Positions 1,594-52,936 of a DNA stretch of 64,000 nucleotides are shown here, in pieces. Source of the DNA: Stylophora pistillata (Eukaryota); contig NW_019217963.1 of assembly GCF_002571385.2 (NCBI RefSeq), positions 479,164 to 543,163 of the forward strand. Reading direction: 5' to 3'. The stretch's first letter is position 1. The number at the start of each line of letters is the position of its first letter. The position numbers and the translations under genes are program-made. The notes beneath the pieces were generated by a model. It ran no database searches and was not told the origin of the DNA. It was given only the letters and a program-made list of their open reading frames with translations.

Positions 1594-1884
1594 CTTCATC
1601 AGTGTCTAGTTCCACATGAACGTCGCTATCACTGCTTTCTTCCTCTGAATCTTCAGATATTTCAGCATCTCCAAAATATCCCGACTCTGAGATGGGATAA
1701 TTTGAGACCTCTTCAAGCAGTAGCTGAACACCTGGCACATCTTTTAATAAACTCCTTTCATCGATATCTCTTTCCAAATCACCTTTACGATCGGTACTCT
1801 CACTCTCAGAATCTTCCTCTGATATTTCTGCATCTCCAAGATGCTCCTCCTCGATAGCTTGATCTTCCGCCACTTGATTTGACA
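1594..1884 (-). CDS. Gene A acidic exon with duplicated GDAEISE motif
   Basis: TTTTAG|TG acceptor, GAAG|GTAAAA donor, 291 nt, phase 1-1. Encodes HLGDAEISEEDSESE and YFGDAEISEDSEEESSDSD. Confidence 0.7.
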
Positions 1885-10800: not shown

Positions 10801-13800
10801 ATGCCTGGAATTGAAACAATTTGGCTTGAACTTCGCTATCCAAGATCAAGACCATGTCTATTTTCGTTTGTCTACCGACCTCCTTCCGCCGATGCTTCGT
10901 TCTTTAAGCGGATGGACTCGATTTTGGCAAAGGTAGATTGTAATAACTATCGGACTTGTTTATTAGGTGATTTTAATATCGATCTTTTTTCAAAATCTGC
11001 TTTCCATAAATGGTTTATTGCCCTAACCAAGGCCTATAGTTTTCATCAACTTATTACTAATGCTACAAGACCGGTATCTGAAACACTTTTGGACCTTGTT
11101 TTGGTCAGTAATGGAGATAATGTTCTTAAATCAGGCACTCTATCGTTATCCCTAAGTGATCATCTTCCCATCTACGTGTCACTAAAATCTAGAGCCATTA
11201 AGGTACAATCTGAGGGCCACAAACCTGTGTTTTTCCGCTCAAAAAAATTTTTTTCTGTTAACACCTTTCTGGCCGATTTAGAATGTTTACCCTGGAGTGC
11301 AATGGATATGTATTCTGAGCCTAGTGAGGCTTTAAGTCATTGGTATACTTTATTTAAAAGCGTTCTGGATTCACACGCTCCCTTAAAAAAAACGCCGTGT
11401 CAAGGGGAAATTCATACCCGAATGGTTCAACAGTGAAATTCAAGCCGCAATTGCTACGCGGAACCATTTGCATAGAAAAGCGATTCTGTCAAACAATGCA
11501 TTATGTTGGCGTGAGTACCGTTCAGCGCGTAATAGAGTGGTTCATCTTATTCGTTATTCTAAGGTAAGGTAAAGTCTGTTTATGAGCCTAGTGGCCCATC
11601 AGGCCGGTGCTTAACTCCGGTTTCTGTAGCATGAAGCGACTAAGAGTATTTCTACTCCCCCCTGGATGGGATGCTAGTCCATCGCAGGGTTACCCCCCAG
11701 CATGAAACTTGCCAGTACCCATTTAAACACCTGGGTGAAGAGAGGCACTGTGAGAGTAAAGTGTCTTGCCTAAGAACACAACACAATGTCCCCGGCCGGG
11801 ACTCGAACCCGGACCACTCGATCCGGAGTCGAGCGCACCAACCATGAGCTGCTGCTGGATTCCCAATTTGGTTTCCGTAGTTCTCGTTCGTGTGAGCTTG
11901 CTATCGCCGATCTTTCCGATAACATTTTGACCAACATGGATAACAAACTCCCTAATGGACTTCTGTTAGTTGACAAACTAACAGAAAGCATTTGACCTTG
12001 TGGATCATGACACTTTTCTTAACAAACTTCGTATCTACGGTTGTTCCCATTCAACCATGACTTGGTTTCGCTCTTATCTGTCCGGGCGTTCCCAAATAAC
12101 CCAGTTTAGGGGCACTCTATCTGCAGCACTTCCAGTTTCTCTAGGTGTGCCTCAGGGTTGTATCCTGGGGTCACATTTCTTTATTATTAATATCAATGAC
12201 TAGCCATTAAACCTACATTCAGGCGTAACTTCAACTATGTTTGCGGATGATACTACTCTTCTTGTTGGAGGGCCCTCTGTTACTTCCCTCAGCACTCAGT
12301 CGAATGAGGTTGCTAGAACTGTGTCTACGTGGGCTGATAATAATCGAATGTCACTTAACACAACCAAAACTAAATCTTTACTTATTACGACCCTGCAGAA
12401 ACGCTGTACTTTAACCAGCTCGGCACTTGATTTCCAAATCAATGGTAGATCCATTGAGCAAGTGGACTATGCCAAGATACTGGGCGTCACGATAGACAGT
12501 GACATGTCTTGGGAGCATCACATCGATACAATATGCTGCATAATTAGCAGTAGGCTTTCTATTCTCCATCGAATTAAACCTTATCTTAACTTTGATTCTG
12601 CTATAAGGTTCTATAATTCTTGTGTTAACAACTACTTTATCTATTGTTCCGCTGCCTGGGGTAACTGTTCCCACCATCTACTCTTACGACTGCTTCGTCT
12701 CCAAAAGCATGCTGGCCGTATACTCCTTGATGCCGACCTCTCTCAGGCTTCTATTTCCTTATTTTTAAAACTCAACTGGATCCCCGTTTTTGACCTTATT
12801 AAAAACATGAAACTTTTACCTCTTCTCATCGTACTCTTCTATCCGAATGCTCCTATATGTCTTCGAAATAGATTTCAATTTCTTAGTGTTTCACGTGGAC
12901 CACAGGGCCGTTTTACAAGATCGTCTCTCTACAACTTAAGGGGGCATTCTGGTCAAAAAAAATTAAAAATCTTTATTTTTTTCGAAAATGTTTTGATGGC
13001 CTCTTTAGTTGGGCAAATCTGTCTAGTTTAAAGTTTTGATGTCAGTTTTTCCACTTCCAGTTTGCGAGTCAGTAAAAAATGAGGTTTTCTTAGCCTTGTT
13101 TTTTTGTTGTTTTTCGGTTTCCATAGCAACGGTTTCAAATTTTGCGTTATTTTTGCGATCGATGCGTTATAACTTGTTAAAACACGTTCCTACGGTCTGG
13201 TGTGACCAGAGTCCGTTCCACAGGTACAATCTTTTCGGTTCTAAGCTAGGTTACTAAGCCAATTCAGCTCTCGGCCAAAACTCCGCATTGCTCCATAATA
13301 CTTTCGCATTGCTCCATAATATTTTCGAATTACAATGCCAAAAGAAGGACGCAAACAAGCTGTTTTAAGGAAAAATGTTTCGAAAAAGCGAAAAAGTGGT
13401 TTCAGAGGCACTTCAGTCCATGATTTAAAGCGCCAGAATAAAGAGAAACGGCCAACAGTAGGAGTTACTTTCGTCGATGAAGACGATGTGGTCAGCGAGC
13501 TAATTCCACCACCAGCTGTGCCTGCATCTTCCAGAAAGATTCAAGTCTCTGAGACCGAAAGCCTCTCAGACGAGAATTCCTATAACGCTTTCGAGTCAGC
13601 AAATGGTTATCGCCTTGTTAGCATGGATAGCTTAAGGAAATTTTGTAACAGGATTCATTCACACTCTAGTACGAGAAGTCCTCTCAGANNNNNNNNNNNN
13701 NNNNNNNNNNNNNNNNNNNNNNNNNNNNNNNNNNNNNNNNNNNNNNNNNNNNNNNNNNNNNNNNNNNNNNNNNNNNNNNNNNNNNNNNNNNNNNNNNNNN

Positions 13801-30050: not shown

Positions 30051-30600
30051 CTGATAGTATTACAATGAGCTTATGTTAGAGTCTTAAAACATTTGACCGT
30101 TGGCAATTTTTTTCATAGACCGTGAAGAGTATAAAAATACTACTGAAACTGAGTATTGTTAGAACAACGGTTTTAGTTACACACGATACCTTAATTCAAT
30201 GTTTATTTCATCATTTCGGCTTGTAACGCAATACAAGAGGAAGCTTGTAGAAGTAGCAAACGACGGCCCCTGCAGGAGCCTATCTGATATGAAATTTACT
30301 TTTCATTTTCACTTTAGCATTTCCTGCTTTGAGCAGTAATTTTTTTTCACGTGAAGTTTGAGAATTTTGAGAATTAATTCCCCTTACTGCCATTTATTGA
30401 CGCACGACGTCAATTCAAAAACATATTTGGGTTTTATAAGAAATATAACCAAATATAGAAGCTTCAAAGCGTTTTAAATTAAACCCACTAGAACGGCACA
30501 CAACTATCTGATCTGTGTATAGCATTATCACGTTCTCATCACGCTAGAAAACGTGGATACCTTATTCATTAATGGCCCTATGCATTGATGATCAGCACGT

Positions 30601-34835: not shown

Positions 34836-37019
34836 GGATGCACTTGTTTTGGTACACCCCCGGACAATCCAAAGTATTTTATAGGTTGTGAATGAGGCCC
34901 TGTGTGTCGATTTCCTTTCATTAGTGTCAAGTTTCTCCTCTAAACAAAACCACGTCGAGTTGAAAAAAAAATACGTTTTTATACTCTTAGTTTTTCTCTT
35001 TCTCAGTTTTTAAAAAAAAAAAAACTGTGTTATTTGGGACTACGAGAGCCGAGGGGACGGTTCATGTATTATTTATTGATAAATACACAGACAGATCGAA
35101 GGCGAAATTAAGTATTTACAGTTATATGATAAAACTAATAAAGTTTTAATTCTAATGGTATATGTAATTATACCAAGGATAATGATATAGAAATACTAGT
35201 CTTCTGAGTAAACTGGTGGTAAAAACGTAGACTATAAAGATAAATATTCTTTTAAACACGAGCTCATTAAAAATGTGTTTCTGAAACGATCTGTTTTCCA
35301 TTTTAGGACGATAATTAGACCCTGATTAACGCAAGGTTTATCCATTATTATACATTATTTATACTTTATTAAGATCCAACTGCTAACATTGTACTCGCAT
35401 AAAAAGAAGCAGAAAATACAAACATTTGATGACAAAAAAAAAATTAAGTTGTAGCGCAGGAGATAAACGCCTTGCACTATAGAAGAACCTTGCAAAAATC
35501 GTTTTCTACAGCAGCAAACACCAAAGAGATTAAAATCAGCCAAAGAACGGTGAAAATTGCTAAAATGCCACTTAATTGTGAAAAACACTTCGCTGATCTC
35601 AAGGGATGCTTCGAAAATTGGTATGTTCAGACATAAAAGAGAGGAAGAATTAAATTGAACTAGGGGCTACGAGGTTATGGCATCTTTTGACATATCTACC
35701 TTTGCAAAATGCAAAGAATAATTCATAAACTAGCACATTTTCGTAGTCAGCAACTTAACGATTCTCTAGATTGGCAATGATCTTGGAAATAAATGTAAAA
35801 AATATATAGAAAAAAAAATTATAAGAATAAAAACCATGCACGTAAACAAAGCCAACTAGCCGGTAATTTCAGCTGGCACAATGTTTCTCAGCCGTTGACA
35901 ATCCTCCTCTAGTCGGATGCTTCGGCTTTCCTTGCCAAGAGACGAATAACTACCTTTGTGTTTAGGCCTAGCTGCTTCAGAGAAGCCTGGTTTAGCTTTA
36001 GATTATTTTGTACTTGTGACGCGAGTTCTCTGGCGTTACTTTTCCCCATCAAACGCAATTTCAGAATGCCTCCAAGAAGAGAAACCTCGATACATTCTAA
36101 TAAATGAAAATGGATACATGTGAGCAGGTGCCAAGTACCAAAGCATTAAAATGCTTTATATTTTATGAACTAAGTAAAAGTTACAAGCATTTTCAAAACT
36201 AATGGGGTAACATATAGAGTAAAGAAGTGGTTAGGCTGCTTGCGTAGAAATTATCCAGGAATGCTGTTTAGAAACCTCATGCTGCTTAGGTATGACATTT
36301 TTTATCTGGGCGCGACAACTGCTTCTCTCTAACAAAACTGTAGCGTTGCACAAGTAGAAAAACAAAAAAACAAACCAACAAGCATTGACCTTCATCCCCA
36401 TTTATTTCCTTGGCTTCATTTTTTTTTTTTTAATTCAATTATATTTTTTTGTTAAGCCAAGCTGCAATAACTGCAGACCACCCACAATGGCCAACCAACC
36501 CATGATATGAGCAACTTCTTAATCTAATCTGTTATTTTATCATCGATGCAACTACTCTGTCTTAAACCCCGTAAGTACTCGTCATACATACATCAAAGTG
36601 TACAAGTATGTGTATGAAATAATTCGTATCCAAGTTAATTCCACTGAGAAAATTGTAGCGCGAAAGGGGATTTGAAAAAACTCTCATACCTTTCACATAG
36701 CCGAGTGAGTTCCGATATTTCTGCCATCAGTCAACTGGAGAATCTTAATTGAGAAAGAAGAGAAATTTATTCAGGATAATTACAATTTGCGTTCGAGGAA
36801 TATGTTTGTGAATTTGAGGAGTCACTTAAAGCATGATAATCATTTTTTTATGTTGTCCTTAACGTTTTGGCAAACATTATATCACAGCATCCAAAAACTT
36901 TGGCGCCTGCATAACAGGATCGATAAATGGCTAATTAAGTACACTCACCCGAATTCCTGGGGCAGTCTAGGTGGCACATTCCTCGACTGGATCTTTGCAG
37001 GTCTTTGCAGTAGCATTTT

Positions 37020-40000
37020 TTATGTTACTGCTGTCGCTGTTTTGCTCAAACTCAAGCCAGAGGTGCATACATTCTGCTTGATTGCAACCTTGAACCTTCT
37101 GAGTGCAAACGAGTCTGACTGAGTTTTCTTCACAGCAGGCAGGGCGGATGAAACCTCTTTCATGTGATAAATTCTCCAGCCAGGAGAACTCAACTCACAT
37201 GGAGAGAAGTGCCAATTCAAGCTGTTTACGTACTTTCTGAGCAAATGAAACCCCAGTGGAGTTGCCCCATCCGTGGCTCCTTTGAGTTGGATAGAGAACA
37301 AATTCCATAGACGGTGCACGGAATACATGCCTGGAAAAACATATTATATTGGAAGTGAGAAAAACTGTCATGAAATGAGATAGTTATACGGCCCACAAAA
37401 GTTTTTATCACTTTTCATCTAGAATTGGGACACTTAAATAACGAGAGCCACATCAGGGATAAATGTCGTATTCTTTTGTGCTTCAGTCAAGATTTCAAGA
37501 CCTTTATACTCGTGGTAAACTAGGGCCGATATCAAATTTTCTTAAGTAGGCATTACTCAGTGAAAGCCTATGACCAGTGCTGTGAAAAAAACCCAAACAA
37601 AGACAACAACAACAAAAACAGACAACAGAAGGGGGAAAGTGACCATATACAGAAACTTACTTTCGAGTAATTCTTCCAATTTACCCATATGATCAGTCTT
37701 AATCCTCTGAAGCTTCCTCTGCGTCAGATGTTTCTGCATCTCCAAAATAACCCTCCTCTACTGGTTGATCTTCCACCACTTGAGTTACCACTAAAAAGTG
37801 ACACGGTCGCCAAAACATTAATTTAAAAGAGAAATGTAATCGTTTGTTCCAGGATGTAATCAATTGGGATATGGATCGAGACGTTTCGACTGCATACTGC
37901 TAATGTTCTCCAAGTACTGTTGCTGGTTTCAATGCTGTAGGAAGCTTTCTACGCTATCGCGGGCTAAGATGGTAAAAGTGTCGTCTAAGTAGCGTTTCCA
38001 GATCCTGGGTATGTAGGGTGATGATGTTACTGCTTGTTCTTCAAAACTCTCCCTGTGGAGGTTAGTGATAACTGTAGAAACCGGGCTTCCAACAGCTGTG
38101 CCTTCATCTAGTTCGTAAATTGATCCATTGTACTGGAAGTAACAGATTAAAATCGACGACGAAAAAACACAACAGTAGCAGAGCCGTGCGGCAGCAGACC
38201 ACAGAGGGATCCTGCCCGAAAGATGCACCAATCACAGCTGTGGAGTTCTATCCAATCACGGCTAAGCACACAACATACGGCTGACTCGGTCGACCTCAGC
38301 GCCTGAGGAAGACTAGCAGCATGCAGTCGAAACGGAGCGATCCACATCCCAGGTGACCACATCGTGAGAGAAACGATTACATTTCGCTTTTAATTATTTA
38401 CCACGATGAGTGATCTCAACCTATTTTAAGATAAAAATATTCATGTTCAACAAAGAATCAATGCATCATGGTCCAAATTTGTCGAGACCAAGATTTCCTA
38501 TCACGCAACTTAAGTAGATGGTTCTCCAGTTGAATTGCAATTTTTTAAGCCCCCATTTATGACAAAAGTTGAAAAAATCGACATTAGACTTACTACTACA
38601 GCTTTCTCGTAAATGTATTGAACGATAATGAGAATATGAGCCCTTTACTACATAAGGTTAACCAGGAGAAGGCACTTTCGATGGCGATCAACTTTAGAGG
38701 TACATATGTCATGATCAGATTAAACATGCCCGACAAAAGAGACCGTTTACTATTTTTTTAAGTATTTGTACATTAGTCATTAATTCAAGTCTTAAAAAAG
38801 AGAGGCAGAGTGAAGAGAGCGCTTCACTTTCCATTACGAACATACTCCTTTCCACATCAAAATAAATCGGTTTGATCATGATAGCGTTTTTTTTTTTTTC
38901 AGACTGCCAACAGACATTCTGCTGATTCAGGGAATCGCAATTGAAGCCCCTTGTAAAGAAACTAACCCAGCCATGATTTTCAAGCACTTGCGAAAATAAG
39001 AAATAATTACAAAAGAAAAGCTTGGGCGTTATTCTGACGATCCCAGGTTTCATGGTTTGACTCTACGAAACTCTCAATCTAATCATTTCTTGTCATAAAA
39101 GTTTAGAGGTCATTGCTTCAAACAAGCTGAAAATTCTTACCTAACTCTTGGTTATTTTCCTCTGCAAATTCGTCACTTTCGTAGTCAGTCACACTCCTGA
39201 GACGCTTTACAGACTCTTCGACTTCATCTAGAAAGCGTTTAGCGCGCGTAGTCTGCTCGGTTGTGGAATTTTCAAATTTTTTGTAAGTAAATATAGCCTT
39301 TGCCACATAATCACCGTTCAGTGTGGTGAAAGTAACGGTAACAGGTCCTGGCGCGTCACCACCTATTTTGTACAAGTAAATGATACAATATAACATGTGA
39401 TAGATTTTCATTATTACCTGTAATATATGACTTCAGTAGTCGCGCTGAGTTCTTGAAAAAGGAAATTTGTTTTGTAGTGAGTAGTGAGTGTTCCCATATA
39501 GCTAAATACATAAAATGAAGAGCCGCAACCTGTTACGGGACTGGGCAGGAAGCCCTAAACCACTTCTGGTAAAAATATTGTACATCTCGGCAAGAATTTA
39601 CACCCTCTTGTATCACTACTGAGTATACCTCAGGCTGAAAAAGAATCAGCCTACGCAGTTGAAGGTCACTCCTCAGCATAATCAGACAAAAAATGCAAGA
39701 TACTTACGAGGAATTTCCTCTCCAAACATAGCCAGACCATCCCTCGTTACCCTGACTTTCTCGGACCTATTACCAAATGATGCCCAAGCTGTCGCCATTA
39801 AGGGAGGAAGCTCTTCATCTATTTCTGCACGGAAGATTCCTCCGCCCTAGTTGAAAAATGGGGAAAATAAACCCGAAATGTTAATATTCCAAATCGTACT
39901 TCCAATGCGCAAAAAAAAAATGGTTACGGAGAGCTTGGTAGGCGCTAATGTCGATTATTTCAAGTTTTAAATACAAGCATGAACCAGAAAACGCAAAAAG

Positions 40001-43000
40001 AAAAAAAAACTCGTGGCATCCATACATTTTACCGCGTAAAAGGATGACACATTAAATCACGCCTTTCGCAGCTTGGAGCGAAATAGTTTGGTATTTCAGT
40101 GGTGTCTCAAAAATAAAAAGAACAATGCATGGCCGCCTAAAGATAAGAAATTTCTCATCATGAGTTGAACAACATTTCTTCCGTTCGCTGCGCTCATGAT
40201 CACTCGTGAGATATTTTCCTACACTCGAAATCATGCTAGTTGATACGTGATGCAGTATAATGACGGATGCTAGGATTTTGCTAGATTTCCATGGATGAAT
40301 TACAGAAACTTAAACGCGAATTTTACCAATGCCAAAAAATTTAGAAAAAACTTTTAGGCAAAAGCGGAAGAAATGATAAAGTAGGTGCTTCTTTGTCGCC
40401 TCTCAGTACATTTTAATAGAAACAAGGAGGAGTTCTTTTCTAAATGGTACATCTAATATTACTTCCAATTTCCGCTCATTGCAAGTTGGATAAACAAATA
40501 ACGGCAAAGGACAAATACAAAATCTGGATCTACCTGCAAAGGCCCCTCGCTGGGTTTCATTCTCGCTTCTTGAACGCGCAGAGGTTTTGGTCGGTTGAGA
40601 GTTTCAGCCTGACACGTGCTCGCTGTATAAAAATTTAAAAAAAAGCAAAACTAAACGACTGTAATCTGAGACGAATTTTAAGACGCAAAGCAAGTTTTAT
40701 CCCAAATTAAATCTGCCAATTAGTCACTCTAAACCCATGTACCCCTATCGCCGAGTACATAGCTGAGCATTTACGGGGAAAATTCACGGGCGAAAGGGCC
40801 GCGGTTATCGGGGACTTCTACAGCTATTTCATGTCATTCAGGGTGCGGGGCATTAGCACCAATGCAAGCACCAGTCTAATGCTCCGCTATCTCCCGACCC
40901 CGGGGGTGCAGGGATTTATATTGACTAGTCCACTACATACTAGTAAGAATATATCGAATCTAGTCGTGACGAGTTTTACTATTTCGAGATGCTACTTCAG
41001 AAGACGATTGAGTAAGAGATGGGATGCTAGTCTTTCGCATGTTACTCACTTTACCCGGTGATCATATTTTTATGGCCTTTTTAGGTCTCTTTACCCGTAG
41101 TCAAGCGCACTTTTAACTGGACTACCACAATCCAGATCTACACCGTGTAATTTTACTTTTCCATAATTATATACGTTATATACTTTTTTATTCAAGTGAG
41201 CTGTCAATTGCAATAACGAAGAGTCTACTTCGGATTTCGATGTTCTGTCCTAGCCCAGTGTTTTATGGAAAGGTTTTTCAGTTAACTTAGTTAATTTTAG
41301 TTGTTTGTTTCATTTTCCCGTAATTACGGAAATCAAGCCTAACAAGTTTTACTCCGTCAAACTCACCTTCAGACGAAATACCGCTGTCAGATTGTCCGGA
41401 AGAATCTCTTACGTAGTTTGGTAAACGATCTTTCCCCATCAACTACAGAGCAGGGGAGAAAAACACAGACATATTTACTTTGAGCAATTATAGACGCCCG
41501 TGCACCTGCGTCGACATACAAAATAAACGACGAAGATCTTGAAATCAACTTAAAAGCAAATTTTCGAAGTCGTAAGATGACAAGCTTATGATAAATAAGT
41601 TTGTTGAGCTCTAACCTTGACTATAGACTACGAGCAGTCCCTCCTTTTCGGCGAAGTCCGTCACGCGAGTCAAAAAAAAAATCGGTGAAAATAATTGCTG
41701 TTAATGCGCAGTAAGGAACTCTTAGAACTCTCTAAAAGAGCCCCCTCGGCACGCTAACAACAGGTTTTTTTCACTGTTTTTTTTTTTTTTTTTGGCCTGC
41801 GCGATGGACTTTGCCGAAAAGGAGGGATTTCTCATAGTCTATGACTGTTACAATGCCTGCTGTGCGGCCTTAATTCGCCGTAACTTTGGGCGACTTTGGG
41901 CGATTTAAGGCGACTTAAGACGACTTTAGCGAAAGTGGCAGAAAAAACATTGCGACTTTGGGCGATTTAAGGCAACTTAAGGCAACTTAAGGTGACTTAA
42001 AGTGATTTTATTTGACTGAAGTGATAAAATCAAAGTTAGCAACAGTCTCTCCATAAACCTTAAAAATATTTACAGAATCCCTTGCAATAAACACCATAGT
42101 CAATTTGATTACTTTTGTGTGCTCATAAGTCACCATAGTCTAAAACATCCAGATTTCAAACCAATTTAGCTAAAAATGATTGGACAGAATTACCACAACA
42201 GTTGTTATTAAATCATACAGTCAAAGCTAGTGAATAAGTGAGTGGCAACACTAGACACCAAAACTGGACTAATGTGACACCGCGGAAATTCGTTTTTTGG
42301 GGCACGTACAGTATTTTACTGGTCAGCGGACACCTTGACGAAACCAGAAAATGCCGATAACTTTTACAGTGTTTTCGCCATGAGTCTAATCGACAGCGTA
42401 AAAAGGCAAAACTTAGGAAGAATACTGCAAACTTAGCTTTGAAACTCGGCTCACCTTTTGGATAGTTATTATGCTGAGTTATATAATTTGCCAAAGCCGA
42501 ACTGAAGTTGCAAACGATTTGAAATTGTTGTTTTCCGCAGGCGGCTCCGTGGCAACTAAATTCTGTTTATAAAAGAGCTTTTGCACTAGGGCTAAAAATT
42601 ACACGGTTTTTGAATGGCTGAGGCGGTGATCCAAGAACTTTGCATGACCGGGTTTGTAAATCAGTGGCTTGACTCATATAAATCGGCATGTCAACGGCAT
42701 TTTGATCAGATCCGTCGAGAAGACAAAATATGGGTACTCGTGTAAGTAGCACGGCCATCCTATCCCCACTCGTTATTGCCGAACGTTGTATCAAGTTGGC
42801 CAAAACAGTTCTACGAATAAACCTGGAACACACTGCCGTAACATTTGTACGATTGAAGCCCCCAAAGTACAAGAACTGGCCTCAAAAAGAGAAAGATTAA
42901 ACCGAGGTACGTGTCAAGTACAAAATGTCCATTTTAATGATAATAAATGAAGTTTTCACTTTCCACCTTAGTTTGTAATTTTTTTTCTGAGCAATAATTT

Positions 43001-46000
43001 TACTTTCCCAAAAAGTATTTGTTTCCCATCACAATTATGAATAATTTGCAGTATGTCTTTTTTTTATGCTGCTCTTCCCTCACTAATCATTTTATTTTGT
43101 TTCTTTCTTTTTTATTTTTCTTTTCTTTCTCTACTAACTTACTGCCATCTGCAACATAAAATGTACTGAGCTAACAGAAAACTTCTGGTTTATTTAGCTT
43201 CCTGATTCACAAAGTAATATTACCATCTTGGTACTACTAGAAAACAAATTTTTAAAAAAACAAAAGTACTGTAAGGTAAAATAATTATAGTAACATAATT
43301 TAATCGATTTATGAGAAGAAAGCACTGTATTGTCTTTTCTCATATTGCAACAGCCTTGAATGAATCAACTATCTTCTAAACTTGATTTCTTATAATCAGA
43401 AGCTGCCCGAGTTATAAATGAAGAACTCTTGATAGGTGTTTATGGAGGTGTAAAGAACATAATGACCATGATGATTAATCTTCCAAATCAGAAATGTCAG
43501 AGGAAAATTATCAGAAGCATTTCTGAAGTCAAAGTTGTTTGTTAAAAATGTTCAGGAGAAAATTTATTAGATTAAGTCAGTTGTCAATTCCCAGTTAACA
43601 ATAAGTCATGAGGAGTAACCAAGAGCTTGTAATTAGCCACTGCTGTGCCCATCAGTCAAATAAAAATCAGGGATGGGATATTCCCAAACATGAACAATCA
43701 TAGCACCATACAGATGTCCTTTTCCCAACTTATTACTGGGGAGGGGACCACTGGTATGGCTATGCTAGTTGTAGTCAATAAGAAATTCTCAACTAGTTTC
43801 AGCAATATACATATATTTTGCCACCTTGAAAAACAAATGGTTACAAGTCAAATAGAAATGTTTCATAATGATGTTGTGTGGGGATACAATGTAATATCAC
43901 TGATGGGGATCATAATTATCCTTACAGTGGTTCAGAGCATGGGATGTGTATGATTCCTTAAGCACATAGAAACTATGTAAAGCAAAGCTAATCTAAAAAC
44001 AATTAATGGAAGAAGAGTAGTTGATTATTTGCATAAATTAATGCAATGCACGTGCAAGATAGTGGAATATACTTCAGGTAAACAGACATGTGCCTGTAAA
44101 CGTTTCGAATGACTGAGTTATAAAAAGTAATAATAAAAAAAAAGTGAGTTTCATTGAAAATGCTTCCGTGTAAAACAAATAGAGCTGTTTGGGAAATTAA
44201 AGTAGCAGTTGTAGCAACAGGTGCAAGCAAATGTACTAAAGACATGTAATAGAGATCTACAATCAATTGCTATCAATAAAGACTTAATTCAAGATAAATT
44301 GTAAATGAACCGATCATGTTGGACGGTCTCGAATATTACATATTTTCAGCGCCCTCGATCAATCACCTACATAATCTTTCTCGAGCCTTGGCGCAGCAAA
44401 CAATTTTTCAATTTCTTCGATTTGCACCTCCCTTTGTAAACATCCCCATCTATGAGCTAAACAAGCGTTATTCTGTTCACGAGAGATAACTTGTTGATAA
44501 AACTGCAAGTATATGAAATGTACAAATGTTTTCATATTTTGATTACGGACACCCGTTCTTAAAGGTACATAAAATCAGAAAGGTGGAATGGCGAAAAATC
44601 AGTCTATAAAGGTAAAATTATCTTCCAAGCGAATGATTCCAAAATGAAAAGGCACCGCACGTCGACGCAAAGTGAGTGTGAATATTTTCACAACACAATA
44701 ATTACGTGTATCGCTTCATGCTAAAAACACTTAAAAATCCAACCAGTATTCAGACTCGCTGGGAAAGTATCTTCCAGAACTAATCTCCTGCTTTGTCTGG
44801 ATAACTATCGCTGTTTTTGACAAATCTGAATGCGAGGGCGACTGAAGAAACACGATCGCGCTTTGTAATGACGGCCAGCTAAAGTCAGCAAACAGCAAAC
44901 AACTCCAAACACATGACTCCCATGTACCGCTATTTGTTAAGACGTGGTTTTAGTATTAAAAACCCATTCAAAGGATCAATTATAACAAAAAAGGAGAAGT
45001 ATCATGGATATTTTCCAACTTAAAACCACGCAAAAGGCCGATGTTTTTTTCATCGAACTCAGTCTACAAACACACGTGTAGCGGCAAGCGAACATCAAGG
45101 CCGAACGAAGCGCCGAGAAAATCGCGACCGGAGAAATACGACCAAGCCAGGGGATACGTTACGGAGACTTATCTTTAATAGATCTCGTAAACTGTAGGCG
45201 AATTAAAAAAGGAAACTTATATAATCGATTGTACTCAATTGAAACACGTGGCGACTTAACAGCGTAAATAAATCTAACATAACGAAAAGAACTAGTAAAT
45301 GAACTAAGTGCCACGGCAAACACAAAATATATACTTATAAAGATGAAAGAGCTTGCTCGAAACGAGATAAAGGAAAATTATGACTAGAAATAGCCGCTAG
45401 ACGATACGACGGCGGTTGTGGAGGATACCTCCCAATAACACACACACAAAGCATAAAATCAGATCAAGAGAAACGCTACCTTGCATAAATCGGGCAAGCT
45501 ACAGAGTGAGAACAAACGAATGCAACTTACATATCGGTCCCTATACGTCGGTGGCTTGAAACCAAAACTTAAGAAGTAACCTTAGGACGGACGCCGGACA
45601 TAACAGTGAACAGTAAAGGAGCGTACGATGCAACAACTAAAGAAAGAAAAACTATCCGAAAGGCTCAAATGGCACAAAGGCCAACTGTAACTGAAATGTC
45701 ACGCAAACTTCAAGTCACGCAATTAAAGTCGCGCATTTACAACATGGAAGCGCTTGGCAGCCTAAAGTTGATGACCACTGACCACTGTGACGTCACCAAA
45801 ACGTATTTCCGCGGTGTCGACTAATGTCGAGTCCAGTGCACTAACCATTCAGCCACCATGCCTCCTCATCTGATCCTTATGATTAAAGTGGGGTGAATGG
45901 GGTCAATTGATATTAGGGTGGAACCCGCATGACATTGTGTAACCAATAGTGACTTAGGGAAACTTAAGGCAACTTAAGGTGACTTAAGGCGACCTAGGGC

Positions 46001-49000
46001 GGCATAAGGCGACTTTAGGCGACTTAAGGCAACTTTAGGCGACTTAAGGCAACTTAAGGCCCCAGAGTAGGCCTTGTTACAACTATACTCACTCTCAAAA
46101 AACATAATTGATCGATCAAAGTTCAACCAGAGAAAAACATTAAGCTTATACCCTCACTACTCAGTCAAACGAATAACATGCATTTAACCGAAGAATTACT
46201 AAAAAAGTTGGATTGATAAGACTGACTGAATCGATTGCTTCTCAAGGAGCAATGATACAACTAATAGAGTTTAATATACCTTGTTACGCTTCCTGTTTGG
46301 CTTTGTCACTCCACACCCTTGCGTTGTTCCGTGGGCGTTGAATATTCCATTCTGAGAAACGGTTTCTATATCAAATAATCAATATCATTCATTGTCACTC
46401 GGTTTGTTGCACTGTCCAAAAGGCCAATCCAAAATTCCCCCAGGTGGAATTTAGTGACACAAATAATTATCTGAACACCACTCAAAATCCTTAGGACACA
46501 AAAATTTAAAATTATATGGAAGACAACTTTAAGGGCTTTAAGGTTTTAGAAAGGAACTCTAAACGTGAAACATGAAAATTGCCAACCAACCAATGATTAC
46601 AATATTTCTGGAGCTTTGACGTGTATGTTACATTTTAAATTTGTGTTAAAAAGCAGATAGTCAAGCTTCCCTGGCCCACCTTCTAACGAACTGAACGCAC
46701 TGTCATCGCTTTGAAAGGCATCAGTGGAGGATGAGGGAATCTGACTTTGTAGCTAGTAAAAAAAGAAAGAGACCAGTCGTTTTTAAAAGAGCCTCAACTG
46801 TGCCAAATATGCAGGATGTTCATTTCATTGCAAATGAAAACGAGTCAAAGAGTGCATAGGACAATTTTGAAAGATATGAGCGAGGTTTTGTCCAAAGTAA
46901 GAACGTCAATAGACTCATTAACCTAATCTAGATTATAATTATCTGGATGCATCTAGATAACGCACATGTCTTTTCGCATTCACACCATTTCATTAATCAC
47001 ACCACTGCACCAAATAAAAGGTCGTTAAGAATAACCCTATTTAAGGTGGCTGAACACAGTTTTCGCGCGCGCTTTTTCTGATGTAATTAAGCGCGCACAT
47101 GGATTGTAAAAAACAAACATGCCGTCAATAGAGCGGTCATTTTATTTACTCAACACTTACCCGCACTATCTGTGCTATTTTTCTCTATAGTTGGCGCAGT
47201 GTATTGAGGGCTTTAATCTTTTATTACAAAGATATGTTAGAAAATTTAACGGTGCAAAGAACCTAGCAATTCTCAGCTTTTTCGTCGTTACCGAAAGAAA
47301 CCGGTTAAATGTAGCGCATGCGTAGTAAGTAAAAAAATTGCGATTGAATGGAAAATTGCTTTCTCGGAAATAAGCCTATTTCTTGAAAACCACACATTAG
47401 AATTTCACGAAATATGGCACAAAAATACTTTAGGAAATAAGTAACTGGAGTATTGAAAAAAAATGATCTTAAACAAAGGAAATTCTAGAAAATCGAGTGA
47501 AACAAAATGGTGTTAACTTGTGAGTATCGTTACAATCTCCTTGCATACAAATTATAAAGAAAATCTAATGACTAGATTTTCTACAAAGTAACGAAACCGA
47601 TTTTAATTGCCTATTTATATCTATTCATGTCACCATGGCAAAGGCACATACGTCACCTTAACTATCGAAAAAACAAAGTTTATGATATTAACTTGCTTGC
47701 TGCCAGTTTTGGCGACCGACAGATCAAGGGTTTTAGAGAAAATGGTGAGAGAAACAAAGGTATCAAAAACTGTGTTCAGTCACCTTAATTGAACAACTTA
47801 CCTCACTCTGTTCTTGATTTCCATTGATCCAAAATGAGGCCCATGGTATCGTTTCAAATGGTTCAGTATGCTCTCCAAAGTCCATAGCCTCGACGATGTT
47901 TTCCAAATCGAAGTCTTAAAAATGAATTTAAGTCGTGAGTCTATGAGGACTGCGTCTATAGTTTACGTTTTAGAACAATAACGGCTGTTACTCGGGCATC
48001 GAAGGGTGGACAATTCTTCAGCTAAATTTCTATGGCGTGGATTATATTGTCCCATTACTTAACATCATTCTCCAGCGACTAAATTTCCCAATTTAAACCC
48101 TACACTAACAAACAAGGGTTATTGATAGAGCATACCTAAACTTTAAATTCGTTAATTTTCCCATGTAATAAAAAGCAGAATTACCTGGTAAGAAGGGTAC
48201 GTTCAGGTTATCATCCTAGATATAAAACAGAGAAGAAAGAAAATGGTTAGGTGCTTCAATCAACAGCATAAAAAAGCAGGAATGGTGCTTCCTTAAATTA
48301 TACCACAGCAGCCACTGAAAAAAATGTTTTCCAAATATTTACAAAATTTTGCTTGAAGGACTGAACACATAAATTTTCGAACCGAGTAAATTTCTGTCTA
48401 TTTCTGATTTAAAATTCATAATTTTTTTTTCCTCTAATGGAGATTGTTCCAGGCTCTATGGTCTTGCATACGAAAATAATGAATGAGTTAATGCAACCAA
48501 AGCAGTACTCTACTCATACCCAACTCAAATTTTCAATTTGCATTCAAAAATACCCGCTGAAATTTTCTTAGGTCCTCCAACAAAGAGTAACATTCAGTGA
48601 AAGTGTCTTGTTAAGAAAGATTGCTACAGAGACTAACGGGAGGGCTGGACTTTGGACTTTGGACTTTGGACTTTGAACTTTGATGGACTATTTACGCTTG
48701 TCTTCTTTCTAGGTGAAATTCCCAGTATGAAAAAAAAAATTGAACATCGTGGCAGAATTCACTCACCAGCTTATTACTGGTCGTAAAATTTCCCCATTCC
48801 CATGGATCCCATTGTTCCCATTCCACTGAATTTTCTAGGAAACGATTAATTTTCAAAGAGTTAGCACCCTTTAAACAACAGGAGACGCAAGCTCAAGAAA
48901 TGCCATCTCTAAGACTAATTTTGACGTTTCACTCTAAAGCGATTATTTGATAGGAAAATGGCAACCACCTCTGTGAAACTCGGCCACAAGAAGCTAAATT

Positions 49001-52000
49001 TATTTGCAAATTTAGCAAAAATTAGTTCTAGCTACCACATAATTTTACGTCAGGATCAGAGAATGCATGTCTTCGCAATAAAATTTCGGCACTTTGCGAA
49101 TTCCTTTGACAGGATAGTTGGGAAAAAAACACCCGATCACAGTTCTTTTTTTTTTCTATTTTTTTGCGCCTTGACATATTTCACATTCAGATGTTATTCA
49201 AATCGCGTCTTCCCTTATTGGAGGATTCTTACAGACACCGATCAACCAATTTCCATTTCATTACCCTTTTTTTTTTCTTTTTTTTTTTTTTGCGGTACCG
49301 TATGGCGAAGAATCGATCGAACATGATCATGTTTTGAAATTTTTCACTTTAAGTGTTATCATATTGGAAACAAAACCTCATTAAAAATTAACTTTAATTT
49401 TAATGAGGTTTTGTTTTCAATATGATAATGAATGATACTTTCTTAGCTTCGACAATCAAAATTTCGCAAAAAACTTTAAATGTTTGAATGTTTTAAATGA
49501 AAAGAAAATCTGAGTGTATCCATACCTTTTATGGTACCAGAGGAAATGATACAAATTGAAAAAATTAACTTGCCTGTTGGGTTTGTTGCGTTCATAAATG
49601 TCCCTGTTGTCGTGGATTGCCGTGTTTGCATCAATGACACCTTTAACAAACATGGAAAGATGAAATTAAATCTGCTCCTTTAATCAAAGAAACCAATTAG
49701 ATCCCTGTAACTCAGTAGAGTTATGAATCGTGTAATCCAAGACCTAATTACAAGAGACCGAGGGCACCATTGTAACCGATATAAATGTCGTCTCTGCACT
49801 AAATGGGGTTACTGTAATTTCGCTTGTTTACAGGGAGAATTCTCTATTAAACACATATGAAAAATAAATGATAGGTTCAATGCGTGCTTTATCATTCTAA
49901 AATATCACTTACATTCCTTCCATTCTTAGAGTTGCGACAGCAGCTGGCCATGGTGGACGACGAATAACCTTAAATGAAAATATATTTATGCTTTACATGT
50001 AAACTTCAGGTTCGACACGAGGAGTTTTGTAACAACTAGAGAAAGTATAAAAATTATTGAAAAAATTCGTGCTCGAGTACCTTGTAAAGATAAAGGAGGT
50101 CCTCCTGCTGCAGGTAACACCAGGTTTGAGACCGGCTGATTTTGAATTATGAAAAAGTTATTGAAAATTAATTACTTTAATAATTTAAAACCAGTTGTTT
50201 TTGGCTTTTAAATATCCATCTAAATGTAATACATTTTAGCACAATAAATTTGCTTCAAGCATGTTCCAGTTTGTCGCAAATTTTATTTGTATTTACGAAT
50301 TTTATTGCCGGTGACAAGTCATCTTAGACTTTTCGTAGGCTTTGTGTGGGAATGCATTGATGGTAGAGATAGGGTTACTTTTTCCAGCAGGATAATCTTT
50401 TTGACCTGTGCAAGGCGCGCCATGCTGGCTTAAAATCTTCAATCAAAAACTTTCCTAATCCAAAGAGACCAGCTAGCAATACTCAAGGTCACTTTTAAAA
50501 CAAACAAACAGCGTATGTCACCTCCAGTCGTCTACATTGCTTTTTTAAGTGAAATTTGCAGAAAAATAACAATATCCAGACTAAGTCATAAGAGCAGAAT
50601 TGATTGCACAATTTCCCAGAAGATGACTAATACGTACCTTGAGTTGAGGTTCGGATGAGCATTTGAGGTGAGATGCTGGATTATCTTGGTTGTTCAAGAA
50701 ACTGTAATCCACTGAATTTCCTTCAAGAAAATTAAATTTGATTTAAATGTTCATACGAGTTAGTAATGGTATAACCAAAAGGTGAGATAACTTTTGGAAA
50801 AATGTCGTTTATGTCAACTTTTGACCGTTTATGTTCACACGGAATAAATCTTACCTGTTAATTCATTAGAATCTAAAGAAGAAGTTTTTGAATCCACTCC
50901 TGCAACGAGAGGCTGGGCCACAAAACCCTTTTAAAGAAAAAAGGGAGGAAGGTTAGGAATTTGTTTATACAAAAAATTACGTTTTTACGCGTTCGATTAC
51001 TAAAAGGAAGACTAGTTTAAGTAGAATCCACTCCAATTTTTCCATGGAATTAATATATAATTTTCAGCCTCTTCTATGCCTCACTTTTTCAGAGCAAATG
51101 TTGATTTCAATCCAAAATGCCAAGCACAACTTTAAATAGGAATCATTTTTTAATCATTCGCAGGGAATAAAAGGAACCTTTTATTGTAAAAAATCTCTTA
51201 CTTGTCGATTGTGTCCACTATTGGAGAAACATTTATTCCATGGATGACCTGAAATTAAATCTCATTTGTAGGGAAAAGAGAACTTTTGTTATTGGGATAT
51301 GTCTTACCGGTTGATTATCTCCACTGTTGTAGAGATCCTCATCCCATAAAAAACCTGAAATTAAATACGTTACGTATGAAACATTGTCTTACGGTACCGT
51401 GTGGCGAATAACTAAACAAACATCATCGTCTCTTGTAATTTTTTTCCAATCAATCTTTGTTTTAAATGGGAGGAAAATCAGTGGATTCATTAATTCCTTT
51501 CATGGTACCAGAGAAACTGATACAAATTGAAAAAATTAACTTGCCTGTTGGGTTTCTTGTGTTTATAGATGTGACCGTTGTCACAGATTGCTGTGTTTGG
51601 CTCAATGACACCTTTAACAAAAAGGGAAAGATTACATTAAATGTACTCCTTTAATCAAAGAAACCAATTAGATTATCTCAGTGGTGTTATGAATGTTGTA
51701 ATTCAAGTTCAAATTTTAAGAAACTGGTAACAAGCATCATTGTAACCGATATAAATGGCGTCTTTGCTCTAAATGGGAATACTGTAATTTTGCCTATTTA
51801 CAAGGAGAGATCTTCAGTCAACACATGTGAAAAAATAAATGATAGGTTCATTGCGTGCGTTATCTTTAAACTATCACTTACAATCTGGCCATTTTTGGAG
51901 TTCTGAAAGAAGCTGGTGGACGACGAATGACCTTAAATAAAACATGTAAGCTTCAGGTTTGACACAAGGAGTTCAGTAACAACCAGAGAAGACATAAAAA

Positions 52001-52936
52001 TTTTAAAGAAAACTGTACCTTGTAAAGATGAGGGAGGTCCTGCTGTTGATGAAACCAGGTTTAGGACCGGCTAATTTTGAAATATGAAAAAAATGTTGTT
52101 AATGAGTTCATTTCTATTCAAATCCAGTTGGACTTGTACTCTAGCATGTAATCCAACTTTTCGTAAAGTTTTGGAAATTGCGCCAGAACATTTTACTAAT
52201 GGTCTTTGCGATTTATTTTGTCACACCAATCACCAATTTTTCATTTAAAAAATCTATTCTGTATCATCTAGCATTAGGTCTCGATTAAGAAAACTGTGGA
52301 TGTTCCCACATTTTACGAATTGCTTAGGTCAGAGTGCCATACCAGGAAGTAACGAAAGCGAAAGGTCACTAATTCCGAGGTGATAAGCTTCAAAATCATG
52401 CATTCGTATGTTTTATATATATATTTATGGATATATCTTGTGTACCTTGTCCTCCATGACTAAATACAACGCCGATTGGCCTTTTATGTATCTTTTAATC
52501 ATTCGTCCATCCCAAACACGGTGTTCACCATGAAAATTTAATAAATCACTGGTCTGTCCTTCTCGTGATGCACACGAAAACCTAAATAATAATGAGAAGA
52601 AAAAGTATTCCCATAAGGGATTCTTTAAATTTCGCAGTTCCGTTCTCTATAAATCAAAGCCATGAGAGTCATGCAGCGCTGGTTTTACAATCTATTAATG
52701 AATGCAAGTGGTTTCTAAGAAACGTCAAGTACTTACTTCACTTACCTTTTATTTGACAAGATAGGGCGAAACAAGTTTTCAAACAAGCCTCTTACATCAC
52801 CATCTGTCATGTCTTGACGAAATGTCACACGACGCTTGTACCGTTCTCCTTTCCTCAATCCTGCTATTTCTGATAGGGTCAATGTCCTCGTTTCATCTTC
52901 GGTGAGAAGATAAACATTTTTTTGGAATCCTTCCAT
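37020..52936 (-). CDS. Gene B: paralog of gene A; 19-exon model, 641 aa (novel N-domain, S/T linker, DFDLE, DSGISS, IPT/TIG)
   Basis: Exons 52746-52936, 52446-52581, 52019-52070, 51882-51931, 51545-51611 (GC donor), 51308-51354 or 51202-51248, 50855-50927, 50638-50720, 50081-50135, 49913-49968, 49574-49640 (GC donor), 48767-48834, 48185-48215, 47802-47914, 41367-41442, 40534-40622, 39708-39846, 39141-39362, 37020-37330. They sum to 1926 nt with no internal stop. 3' end uncertain: alternative donors near 37198 and 36948. Confidence 0.8.
37818..38433. mobile_element. Penelope-like element remnant with inverted pLTRs and RT fragment
   Basis: Minus strand YFQYNGSIYE..EGTAVGSPVS..ITNL...WKRYLDDTF is a PLE RT. 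Inverted arms at ~37820-37919/38296-38395. CTGAGGA...GAAA core at 38303-38332. Confidence 0.85.
39141..39362 (-). CDS. Gene B exon, IPT/TIG C-terminal half
   Basis: GDAPGPVTVTFTTLNGDYVAKAIFTYKKFENSTTEQTTRAKRF; the PGxVxV...FTY pattern is an IPT signature. Confidence 0.85.
39708..39846 (-). CDS. Gene B exon, IPT/TIG core
   Basis: GGGIFRAEIDEELPPLMATAWASFGNRSEKVRVTRDGLAMFGEEIP. Confidence 0.85.
40534..40622 (-). CDS. Gene B exon, IPT start (RMKPSEGPLQ|GGG)
   Basis: 89 nt, phase 1-0, canonical splice sites. Confidence 0.8.
41367..41442 (-). CDS. Gene B exon with DSGISS degron-like motif
   Basis: LMGKDRLPNYVRDSSGQSDSGISSE; 76 nt, phase 0-1. Confidence 0.8.
41624..41841. mobile_element. MITE (TA-GACTAC termini)
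   Basis: TAGACTACGAGCAGTCCCTCCTTTTCGGCGAAGTCC is inverted at GGACTTTGCCGAAAAGGAGGGATTTCTCATAGTCTA. Confidence 0.8.
41851..46076. mobile_element. ~4.2-kb non-autonomous TIR transposon with 10-bp subterminal repeat arrays
   Basis: CAATGCCTGCTGTGCGGCCTTAA vs right reverse complement CAAGGCCTACTCTGGGGCCTTAA. GGCGACTTAA arrays at ~41880-42005 and ~45950-46060. No transposase ORF. Confidence 0.7.
47045..47784. mobile_element. TTAA-site Kolobok-like MITE
   Basis: TTAA|GGTGGCTGAACACAGTTTT ... AAAACTGTGTTCAGTCACC|TTAA. Confidence 0.85.
48647..48681. repeat. (GGACTTT)n microsatellite
   Basis: 5 copies. Confidence 0.9.
49290..52095 (-). repeat. Intragenic tandem duplication in gene B (49290-50165 vs 51390-52095)
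   Basis: Co-linear exon and intron similarity across three duplicated exons. Confidence 0.9.
49357..49427. repeat. ~30-bp-arm hairpin
   Basis: TATCATATTGGAAACAAAACCTCATTAAAA / TTTTAATGAGGTTTTGTTTTCAATATGATA. Confidence 0.85.

What the first reader, a model, noticed from the sequence alone, without database searches (positions are those of the whole stretch)
37020..52936. Unnamed IPT/TIG protein family with an N-terminal novel domain, acidic activation-like motif, IkB-type degron and post-IPT basic cluster
Seen: genes B and A (1594-16637) share the order novel N-domain, low-complexity linker, DFDL(D/E), DSGxxS, IPT (PSEGPLxGGG...FG...IP..PGPVxV...[F/Y]TY), then a basic cluster 12-14 aa later (RAKR..KRLR in B; KHPKR..KRIK in A). 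Established: DSGxxS is the beta-TrCP degron of IkBa and beta-catenin. Rel IPT domains dimerise and are followed by an NLS at similar spacing. Cnidarian NF-kB is p50/p52-like. Inference: this could be a signal-degradable IPT protein without an RHD DNA-binding domain or ankyrin repeats, acting as a dimerisation partner, co-activator or decoy of Rel-family or other IPT factors. The PSEGP..GG start also resembles Spt23/Mga2, EBF and plexin IPTs, so a Rel link is not proven. The ORF track misses this gene because it is split into micro-exons.
Basis: partly seen in the sequence, partly recalled or inferred. Interest (0 to 1): 0.85.

Follow-up and report, generated by a model that had tools for sequence, protein, structure and literature searches.

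The report
Coral-specific ubiquitin-like plus IPT-like protein family
This is a real, expressed but uncharacterised gene of the coral Stylophora pistillata. It belongs to a small family seen only in pocilloporid corals that joins a ubiquitin-like domain, a long disordered linker with a conserved IkB-type "DSGxxS" motif, and a divergent IPT-like domain predicted to pair with itself. Nothing links it to Rel/NF-kB.

Summary
Gene B (minus strand, CDS 52936-37702) is NCBI LOC111331841 of Stylophora pistillata, 621 aa, 21 coding exons of 30-219 nt. Stranded RNA-seq confirms six introns in its 3' part. Gene A, a copy on contig C438 (B2), about three more copies in this genome and Pocillopora orthologs share the same layout.

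What changes:
- Pfam and PDB sequence searches do not detect the "IPT". Language-model features and predicted strands support it. ESMFold2 predicts a symmetric homodimer (score 0.50, best control 0.01).
- The DSSGQ(S/T)(D/E)SGxxSE micro-exon is conserved, and the genome encodes beta-TrCP.
- DFDL(D/E) is only loosely conserved.
- The post-IPT basic residues lie in a predicted amphipathic helix.
- An unreported C-terminal motif, EEGYFGDAExS, is present in every member where that exon could be read.

The family was found only in Pocilloporidae. There is no DNA-binding domain, no ankyrin repeats and no Rel link. Most likely it is a dimeric, phospho-regulated scaffold; the degron function is untested. 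Two other first-reader notes on this window (s1-775601, s1-775653) cover the DSG micro-exon and the N-domain.

The parts
52745..52936 (-). Coding exon 1 (aa 1-64, ATG at 52934-52936): first half of the N-terminal ubiquitin-like (beta-grasp) domain.
   Evidence: Exact map of P0010. AF2 pLDDT 89-96. Family alignment A4 of 30 genomic copies.
52446..52580 (-). Coding exon 2 (aa 65-109): second half of the beta-grasp domain, with the invariant C..W.G..S.L pattern.
48186..52070 (-). Eleven micro-exons (aa 110-325) coding a Ser/Thr/Gln/Asn-rich disordered linker. A three-exon block is duplicated: 52017-52070, 51876-51929, 51543-51605 versus 50079-50135, 49907-49966, 49575-49634.
   Evidence: exon map. 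(both blocks hit the same C438 stretch). AF2 pLDDT below 50.
47802..47915 (-). Exon with the acidic-hydrophobic motif DFDLENIVEAMDF (aa 326-363). Only the pattern D-phi-x-phi-E/D-N/T-phi-phi is shared. It also fits a class-1d nuclear export signal spacing; that fit is my own reading and is untested.
46681..46752 (-). Exon with the conserved TDAFQSDDSAFSS segment (aa 364-387).
46280..46366 (-). Exon ending in the basic run KPNRKRNK (aa 388-416), which looks like a nuclear localisation signal.
   Evidence: The RNA loose end joins 41444 to 46282.
41367..41442 (-). Micro-exon of 25 aa with DSSGQSDSGISSE (aa 417-441). DSGISS fits the beta-TrCP phosphodegron D-S-G-phi-x-S.
   Evidence: Joint 40622/41367 seen in all four runs. 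Conserved in A, B2 and Pocillopora; one Pocillopora lineage has ESG.
40533..40622 (-). Exon with RMKPSEGPLQ: start of the IPT-like domain (aa 442-471).
   Evidence: RNA joints. dN/dS 0.10 against B2.
39706..39845 (-). Middle exon of the IPT-like domain (aa 472-518). It carries most of the predicted homodimer contacts (474-477, 488-489, 503-514).
   Evidence: dN/dS 0.20.
39141..39360 (-). Last IPT-like strands (GDAPGPVTVTF...FTY), then a predicted amphipathic helix holding RAKR..KRLR (aa 519-591).
   Evidence: Helix 550-578 with pLDDT 75-89. dN/dS 0.06 on the strands.
37660..37790 (-). Last coding exon: acidic tail with EEGYFGDAETSD. The CDS ends at 37702 and the stop codon is 37699-37701.
   Evidence: The motif is found wherever this exon could be read: A (twice), B, B2, the C3 copy, gene C and Pocillopora (YSGDTE in one lineage); the C870 copy's exon was not covered.
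36961..37329 (-). 3'-UTR exon. It carries a remnant, interrupted by a stop, of the last ~115 aa of the 461-aa C-terminal exon that the paralog B2 (P0002) still has.
   Evidence: Joint 37329/37660. tblastn of P0002 aa 849-962 at 62% identity with one stop. The 1.7 kb present in C438 is absent here.
1661..15308 (-). Paralog A (LOC111331818; RefSeq models only its last 307 aa, P0001), with the same order of parts. An assembly gap (N) at 13689-13948 was left untouched.

Best explanation
Gene B encodes an intracellular regulatory or scaffold protein with no DNA-binding domain. It belongs to a fast-evolving family seen so far only in pocilloporid corals.

Shown or predicted parts:
1. An N-terminal ubiquitin-like beta-grasp domain of about 110 aa. 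The same module heads at least 34 genes in this genome. It probably docks a partner, as UBL, PB1 and Ras-association domains do.
2. About 340 aa of disorder carrying conserved short motifs: an acidic-hydrophobic segment, a KRKR-type basic run, and DSSGQSDSGISSE.
3. A divergent Ig domain of the transcription-factor IPT/TIG type, predicted to form a symmetric homodimer through one sheet.
4. An amphipathic helix.
5. An acidic tail with EEGYFGDAExS.

Inferred mechanism: the protein acts as a dimer, possibly also pairing with its paralogs. Its abundance or partner choice is set by phosphorylation of the DSGxxS serines, which SCF-beta-TrCP would then read. B is a shortened paralog that has lost the extra C-terminal domain kept by B2.
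For: - Real, spliced, minus-strand mRNA seen in runs of several studies.
- Exact identity to RefSeq LOC111331841.
- Purifying selection on the IPT exons since the B/B2 split: dN/dS 0.06-0.20 at dS about 0.3.
- IPT-like region: all ten best named ESM-Atlas clusters are TIG, TIG_SUH, COE or RHD_dimer (first hit 0.91, 183 shared features). AF2 gives six strands at 458-542 with pLDDT 50-89, then a helix.
- Homodimer test on residues 455-585: ipSAE 0.50 against a best control of 0.01; runs share at least 65% of contacts; pLDDT at least 79. In the tool's calibration the mark was reached by 21 of 30 proteins solved as pairs and 0 of 23 solved as single chains. On eukaryotes it was 17 of 29 (animals 7 of 16), but only 1 of 7 without an older solved relative.
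- DSG micro-exon conserved from A to Pocillopora, always with a Lys 9-16 aa upstream.
- A beta-TrCP gene is present in the genome (PF12125, 86.5 bits, contig C179).
Against: - No sequence method detects IPT/TIG: Pfam found nothing at E<=1 on full-length proteins; the PDB profile search found nothing; hhalign against this genome's own TIG domains gave P 0.026-0.14.
- The IPT part of the model was never searched alone. The N-domain filled the structural hit lists, and the only Ig-like Foldseek rows are weak (RelB dimerisation domain E 0.24, lamin Ig E 0.54).
- The homodimer pass may come from the model's memory of Rel/IPT dimers, and the chain is a prediction.
- One Pocillopora lineage has ESG instead of DSG.
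- No phosphorylation, binding, turnover or localisation data exist.
- The alignment behind the model has few independent sequences for the IPT region.
Confidence: 0.5

Rival explanations
1. Same architecture, but the DSSGQSDSGxxSE block is not a degron. It would be a conserved phospho-serine/acidic motif (CK1- or CK2-type) read by some other partner, and the protein would be a stable scaffold.
For: The block lies in a Ser-rich acidic context, and DSGxxS is a short pattern. One Pocillopora lineage has ESG. The position after G varies: I, N or A. Nothing here tests turnover.
Against: DSGISS matches the D-S-G-phi-x-S consensus exactly, as in IkB-alpha and beta-catenin (established knowledge). The micro-exon is the best-kept linear piece between A and B (67% against about 40% overall). 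An upstream Lys is always present. beta-TrCP is encoded in the genome.
Confidence: 0.27
2. One reading: a partner, co-activator or decoy for Rel/NF-kB, pairing with the NF-kB IPT and removed on IKK signalling.
For: RHD_dimer is among the near language-model clusters (rank 5). The RelB dimerisation domain appears as a weak Foldseek row (E 0.24). The predicted dimer uses one sheet, which as I recall is how Rel dimers pack. The next gene on the same strand carries a Death domain, which fits immune signalling.
Against: The nearest clusters are TIG/TIG_SUH and COE, not Rel. There is no RHD hit. Heterodimer specificity was not and could not be tested here. The family was not detected outside Pocilloporidae, whereas NF-kB is found across animals.
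Confidence: 0.08
3. The C-terminal beta-rich region is not IPT/TIG but some other small beta-sandwich or a new fold, so the family has no link to IPT factors.
For: All sequence tests fail. AF2 confidence is only moderate. No significant structural match was obtained for this region.
Against: All ten best named language-model clusters belong to one clan. The motif order P-x-E/D-G-P-L, GGG, FG, I-P, PGPV-V and F/Y-T-Y lines up end to end with this coral's own CAMTA TIG domain (72 columns, 29% identity, not significant). ESMFold2 folds the region at pLDDT 79-80.
Confidence: 0.12
4. B is a decaying, truncated duplicate on its way to becoming a pseudogene.
For: B lacks the 461-aa C-terminal exon of B2 and keeps only a remnant interrupted by a stop in its 3' UTR. 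dN/dS is 0.41-0.57 on the N-domain.
Against: All 21 coding exons are intact. The gene is expressed and correctly spliced in independent studies. dN/dS is 0.06-0.20 on the IPT exons. Neither gene A's RefSeq fragment nor the partial Pocillopora protein has a match to the extra exon, and the Pocillopora scaffolds have none within 8 kb downstream, so the short form may be the older one.
Confidence: 0.03

Closest known systems
Transcription-factor-type IPT/TIG domains (Rel/NFAT dimerisation domain, EBF/COE IPT, CSL TIG_SUH, CAMTA TIG)
   Same: About 85 aa of predicted strands with the same motif order. The nearest language-model clusters are of this kind. A symmetric self-pairing through one sheet is predicted. 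As in EBF, a helix follows the domain (the EBF comparison is from my own knowledge).
   Different: No Pfam TIG or RHD_dimer hit. No DNA-binding domain in front of it (no RHD, COE, CG-1 or beta-trefoil), no ankyrin repeats and no IQ motifs. Instead it is preceded by about 340 aa of disorder and a ubiquitin-like domain.
IkB-alpha / beta-catenin type beta-TrCP phosphodegron (D-pS-G-phi-x-pS)
   Same: DSGISS in B, DSGACS in A, DSGNSS in B2 and DSGISS in Pocillopora, each with a lysine 9-16 aa upstream. beta-TrCP is encoded in the genome.
   Different: No ankyrin repeats or armadillo repeats. The kinase is unknown. One lineage has ESG. Function is untested.
Ubiquitin-like beta-grasp interaction domains (PB1, UBL/UBX, Ras-association, talin F0)
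   Different: No sequence match to any Pfam family. I saw no C-terminal Gly-Gly and no acidic OPCA motif. It has its own conserved pattern and a fixed two-exon structure, and the module is expanded to at least 34 copies in this coral.
NF-kB p100/p105
   Same: IPT domain, basic run, DSG-type degron and, in the gene next door, a Death domain. p105 and p100 combine these elements in one chain (my own knowledge).
   Different: The order differs: here the degron comes before the IPT. There is no Rel DNA-binding half and no ankyrin repeats, and the Death domain is in a separate gene.

Membership tests
IPT/TIG (Pfam PF01833, E-set clan) | A match to the family profile above the gathering score. | tested here: not met
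   No TIG hit at E<=1 on exon pieces or on full-length P0002 and P0001. The locus is absent from the PF01833 scan of this genome, where the split exons weaken the test.
IPT/TIG (Pfam PF01833, E-set clan) | An Ig-like beta-sandwich of about 85 aa. | tested here: inconclusive
   AF2 gives six strands at 458-542 with pLDDT 50-89. ESMFold2 gives pLDDT 79-80. The best named language-model clusters are all TIG-type. No isolated-domain fold search was possible, and the Foldseek rows to Ig domains are weak.
Rel homology family | An N-terminal Rel DNA-binding domain plus an RHD_dimer profile match. | tested here: not met
   No Pfam hit. Residues 111-457 are predicted to be disordered.
IkB family | An ankyrin repeat array. 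| tested here: not met
   No Ank hit.
CAMTA / EBF-COE / CSL | A CG-1, COE1_DBD or LAG1/BTD DNA-binding domain next to the IPT. | tested here: not met
   No Pfam hit. The alignment to this coral's CAMTA TIG domain is colinear but not significant (P 0.14).
beta-TrCP phosphodegron substrates | A D-S-G-phi-x-S motif conserved in relatives. | tested here: met
beta-TrCP phosphodegron substrates | Phosphorylation-dependent binding to beta-TrCP followed by degradation. | not testable with these tools
   Only the presence of a beta-TrCP gene was shown.
Ubiquitin-like beta-grasp superfold | A mixed sheet grasping a helix, with structural matches dominated by the superfold. | tested here: met

The most novel reading that the evidence does not exclude
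A gene family born in pocilloporid corals has joined a ubiquitin-like docking module to a Rel/EBF-type dimerisation domain without any DNA-binding part, and placed a beta-TrCP switch between them. The result would be a signal-degradable dimeric adaptor that tunes NF-kB or Death-domain immune or symbiosis signalling. It would have been duplicated as a cassette together with its Death-domain neighbour.
Probability: 0.12. Interest if true: 0.7.

Novelty: new variant of a known kind. Interest (0 to 1): 0.4.

Why it matters
Corals carry many lineage-restricted gene families of unknown role, and some sit in immune and symbiosis pathways. This family now has a testable anatomy built from known folds in an undescribed combination:
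- a ubiquitin-like module that this coral has expanded to dozens of genes;
- a conserved IkB-type phosphodegron;
- a DNA-binding-free IPT-like domain predicted to dimerise.

The family also keeps conserved synteny with a Death-domain gene. If the degron and dimer are real, this would be a family-specific regulatory switch in reef-building Pocilloporidae. If not, it is one more orphan family.

Tried and rejected
- Pfam on eight exon pieces and on full-length P0002, P0001, P0003 and P0008: nothing relevant.
- Pfam on each of 30 N-domain exon-1 copies at E<=10: no recurring family.
- PDB sequence searches with the family profile A2, the N-domain exon-1 profile A4 (only repeat-protein noise) and P0002: nothing.
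- hhalign of the IPT profile against 17 fibrocystin-type TIG domains of this genome matched only the last strands (P 0.026). Against the CAMTA TIG domain and two other TIG-profile hits of this genome it was not significant.
- The first AF2 run, with a four-sequence alignment, failed (mean pLDDT 32.5) and was not used.
- Alignments A3, A7, A9 and A10 were discarded because MAFFT misplaced the exon fragments. A8 was used instead; it has few sequences for N-domain exon 2 and for the IPT.
- Profile search of 1.84 billion representative proteins with the IPT-C exon: 9 hits. The real ones are Stylophora, Pocillopora-type Tara scaffolds, or one fragment of unknown origin.
- The three word-index searches found only P0010, P0002 and P0011.
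- The '1122-aa open frame' next to an N-domain copy on C995 is open on both strands and has no Pfam hit. I take it for a masked or N stretch and did not pursue it.
Within the 1.5-kb flanks they share nothing with B beyond the N-domain.
- Three literature searches (gene and protein identifiers, then IPT/coral terms) found nothing relevant.
- I considered reading YFGDAE as an FFAT-like motif and dropped it, because the extra Gly breaks the core.
- The IPT part was not tested by fold search because the N-domain filled the lists.
- I sent no self-joined exon model to any search tool. One in-script translation of the RNA-supported exons was made only to check the frame. All whole-protein work used the public records P0010, P0002, P0011 and P0001 that the searches returned.
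Full report
WHAT IS THERE

The window is Stylophora pistillata, contig C180:479164-543163.

A profile of the last IPT exon, searched against 1.84 billion representative proteins, gave only nine hits. One was P0001, the RefSeq fragment of gene A (LOC111331818). Another was P0002, a 985-aa paralog on contig C438 (SpisGene17691).

A search with P0002 returned P0010, 'uncharacterized protein LOC111331841', 621 aa. P0010 maps without a single mismatch onto 21 minus-strand coding segments from 52936 to 37702. So the gene is already modelled in RefSeq but has no name, no Pfam domain and no literature.

I sent no self-joined exon model to any search tool. Whole-protein analyses used these public records.

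EXPRESSION

Twelve listed RNA runs hold 25-38% of the sampled words of 37000-43000. Two polyA contig sets and two raw-read runs were laid on 37100-43000. They give five GT-AG joints on the minus strand, which bound four complete internal exons (40533-40622, 39706-39845, 39141-39360, 37660-37790) plus the lower edge of the DSG exon (41367) and the upper edge of the last exon (37329). A loose end at 41444 continues at 46282. Stranded reads have the first mate on the plus strand, which means a minus-strand RNA.

The stop codon lies in exon 37660-37790, so the last intron (37330-37659) is in the 3' UTR.

FAMILY

The copies found in this genome are:
- B, the gene of this finding.
- B2 on C438: 75-82% DNA identity including introns, dS about 0.3.
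- A copy on C3, repeated on C2414 and probably the same locus assembled twice.
- A.
- A copy on C870.
- A divergent gene C about 10 kb beyond the window end (C180:553.5-562.3 kb).

A, C870 and gene C each have the N-domain upstream on the same strand.

Pocillopora damicornis has an ortholog, P0011. Tara Pacific coral metagenome scaffolds carry the whole gene with the same order of parts. Nothing else was found, so the family is detectable only in Pocilloporidae. The profile covered a single exon, so distant relatives may have been missed.

B2 has an extra 461-aa C-terminal exon. B keeps only its last ~115 aa, interrupted by a stop, inside the 3' UTR. Gene A's RefSeq fragment and the partial Pocillopora protein show no match to that exon, and the Pocillopora scaffolds have none within 8 kb downstream.

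N-DOMAIN

The N-domain is not private to this family. Its first exon has at least 34 matches across many contigs, each followed by the second exon after an intron.

The ESM Atlas places the N-domain near unnamed clusters from molluscs, chordates and cnidarians (0.94, 207 shared features). That is a lead only.

IPT-LIKE DOMAIN

Every sequence test fails:
- Pfam.
- PDB profile search.
- hhalign against this genome's own TIG domains.

In favour:
- All ten best named ESM-Atlas clusters for residues 458-580 are TIG, TIG_SUH, COE or RHD_dimer (first hit 0.91).
- AF2 predicts six strands at 458-542 with pLDDT 50-89, followed by a helix at 550-578.
- The motif order lines up end to end with the coral's CAMTA TIG domain, though not significantly.
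- dN/dS on the three IPT exons is 0.06-0.20.

The homodimer test on residues 455-585 reached the tool's mark. The score was 0.50 against a best control of 0.01. The runs agree in at least 65% of contacts and pLDDT is at least 79. The symmetric interface uses residues 464-465, 474-477, 488-489 and 503-514.

In the tool's calibration, 21 of 30 proteins solved as pairs reached the mark and 0 of 23 solved as single chains did. On eukaryotes the figure was 17 of 29 (animals 7 of 16), but only 1 of 7 without an older solved relative. The pass may therefore reflect likeness to known IPT dimers.

I put the IPT/E-set assignment at about 0.75-0.8. A fold search of the isolated domain is the missing test.

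LINEAR MOTIFS

- DSSGQ(S/T)(D/E)SGxxSE is conserved in A, B, B2, P0011 and both Tara lineages; one of those has ESG. A Lys always lies 9-16 aa upstream. DSGISS fits D-S-G-phi-x-S. The genome encodes beta-TrCP.
- DFDL(D/E) is only a loose acidic-hydrophobic pattern. Its spacing also fits a class-1d nuclear export signal; that is my own reading and is untested.
- RAKR..KRLR lies inside the predicted amphipathic helix. The KR pairs are invariant in the four aligned proteins.
- A KRKR-type run ends the exon before the DSG exon.
It is present wherever that exon could be read, including gene C, and twice in A.

SURROUNDINGS

Between A and B, on the same strand, lies a gene with a coiled-coil exon (25765-26217) and a Death domain (29674-30075; PF00531, E 9.5e-12). 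The coiled-coil exon recurs at 61060-61566 with 64% identity. The IPT-family gene and its Death-domain neighbour were therefore duplicated together.

The Pocillopora scaffold has the same neighbour.

Gene A's introns hold a LINE endonuclease / reverse-transcriptase remnant on the plus strand.

VERDICT

This is an unnamed, DNA-binding-free family with an IPT-like domain and a conserved IkB-type motif. The N-domain is a ubiquitin-like module common in this genome. IPT membership is not met by sequence. A Rel link is unproven.

Noticed in passing
window 25765-30075 (-) and 61060-61566 (-): A Death-domain gene lies between A and B on the same strand: Death domain at 29674-30075 (PF00531, E 9.5e-12) and a coiled-coil exon at 25765-26217. 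The coiled-coil exon is repeated at 61060-61566 with 64% identity. So the IPT-family gene and the Death-domain gene were duplicated as one cassette. The same neighbour follows the ortholog on Pocillopora scaffold L056.
   Followed up: partly
L056:9947-11056 and L059:9947-11051 (Tara Pacific coral metagenome scaffolds): The Pocillopora ortholog has three tandem copies of the last IPT exon, about 60-70% identical to each other. Each of the two downstream copies is preceded by a similar stretch that looks like the intron's end. They may be mutually exclusive alternative exons. S. pistillata B has a single copy.
   Followed up: no
G000 contigs C40, C407, C910, C995, C374, C918, C75, C672, C372 and others (loci L062-L091): The two-exon ubiquitin-like N-domain occurs at 34 or more loci in the genome, often in local clusters (four matches on C75, four on C374).
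   Followed up: partly
window 36961-37311 (-); L017 (C438:10378-11760): Paralog B2 has a 461-aa single-exon C-terminal extension with a Cys-rich end and no Pfam or PDB match. B keeps only a remnant of it, interrupted by a stop, in its 3' UTR.
   Followed up: partly
window 41575-46105: About 4.5 kb inside B's longest intron is absent from the C438 paralog, so it is probably an insertion. I did not characterise it.
   Followed up: no
window 10198-13031 (+): A LINE-type retrotransposon remnant lies inside gene A's introns: an endonuclease domain (PF14529, E 5.5e-7) and a weak reverse-transcriptase match. It sits next to the assembly gap at 13689-13948, which I left as it is.
   Followed up: partly
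window 49575-50135 versus 51543-52070 (-): A block of three micro-exons in B's disordered linker is duplicated in tandem. Pocillopora also has two copies.
   Followed up: no
L092 (Logan contig of run SRR31684880): A 93-aa fragment, P0008, resembles the divergent gene C. Its source organism is unknown, so it might extend the family's range.
   Followed up: no
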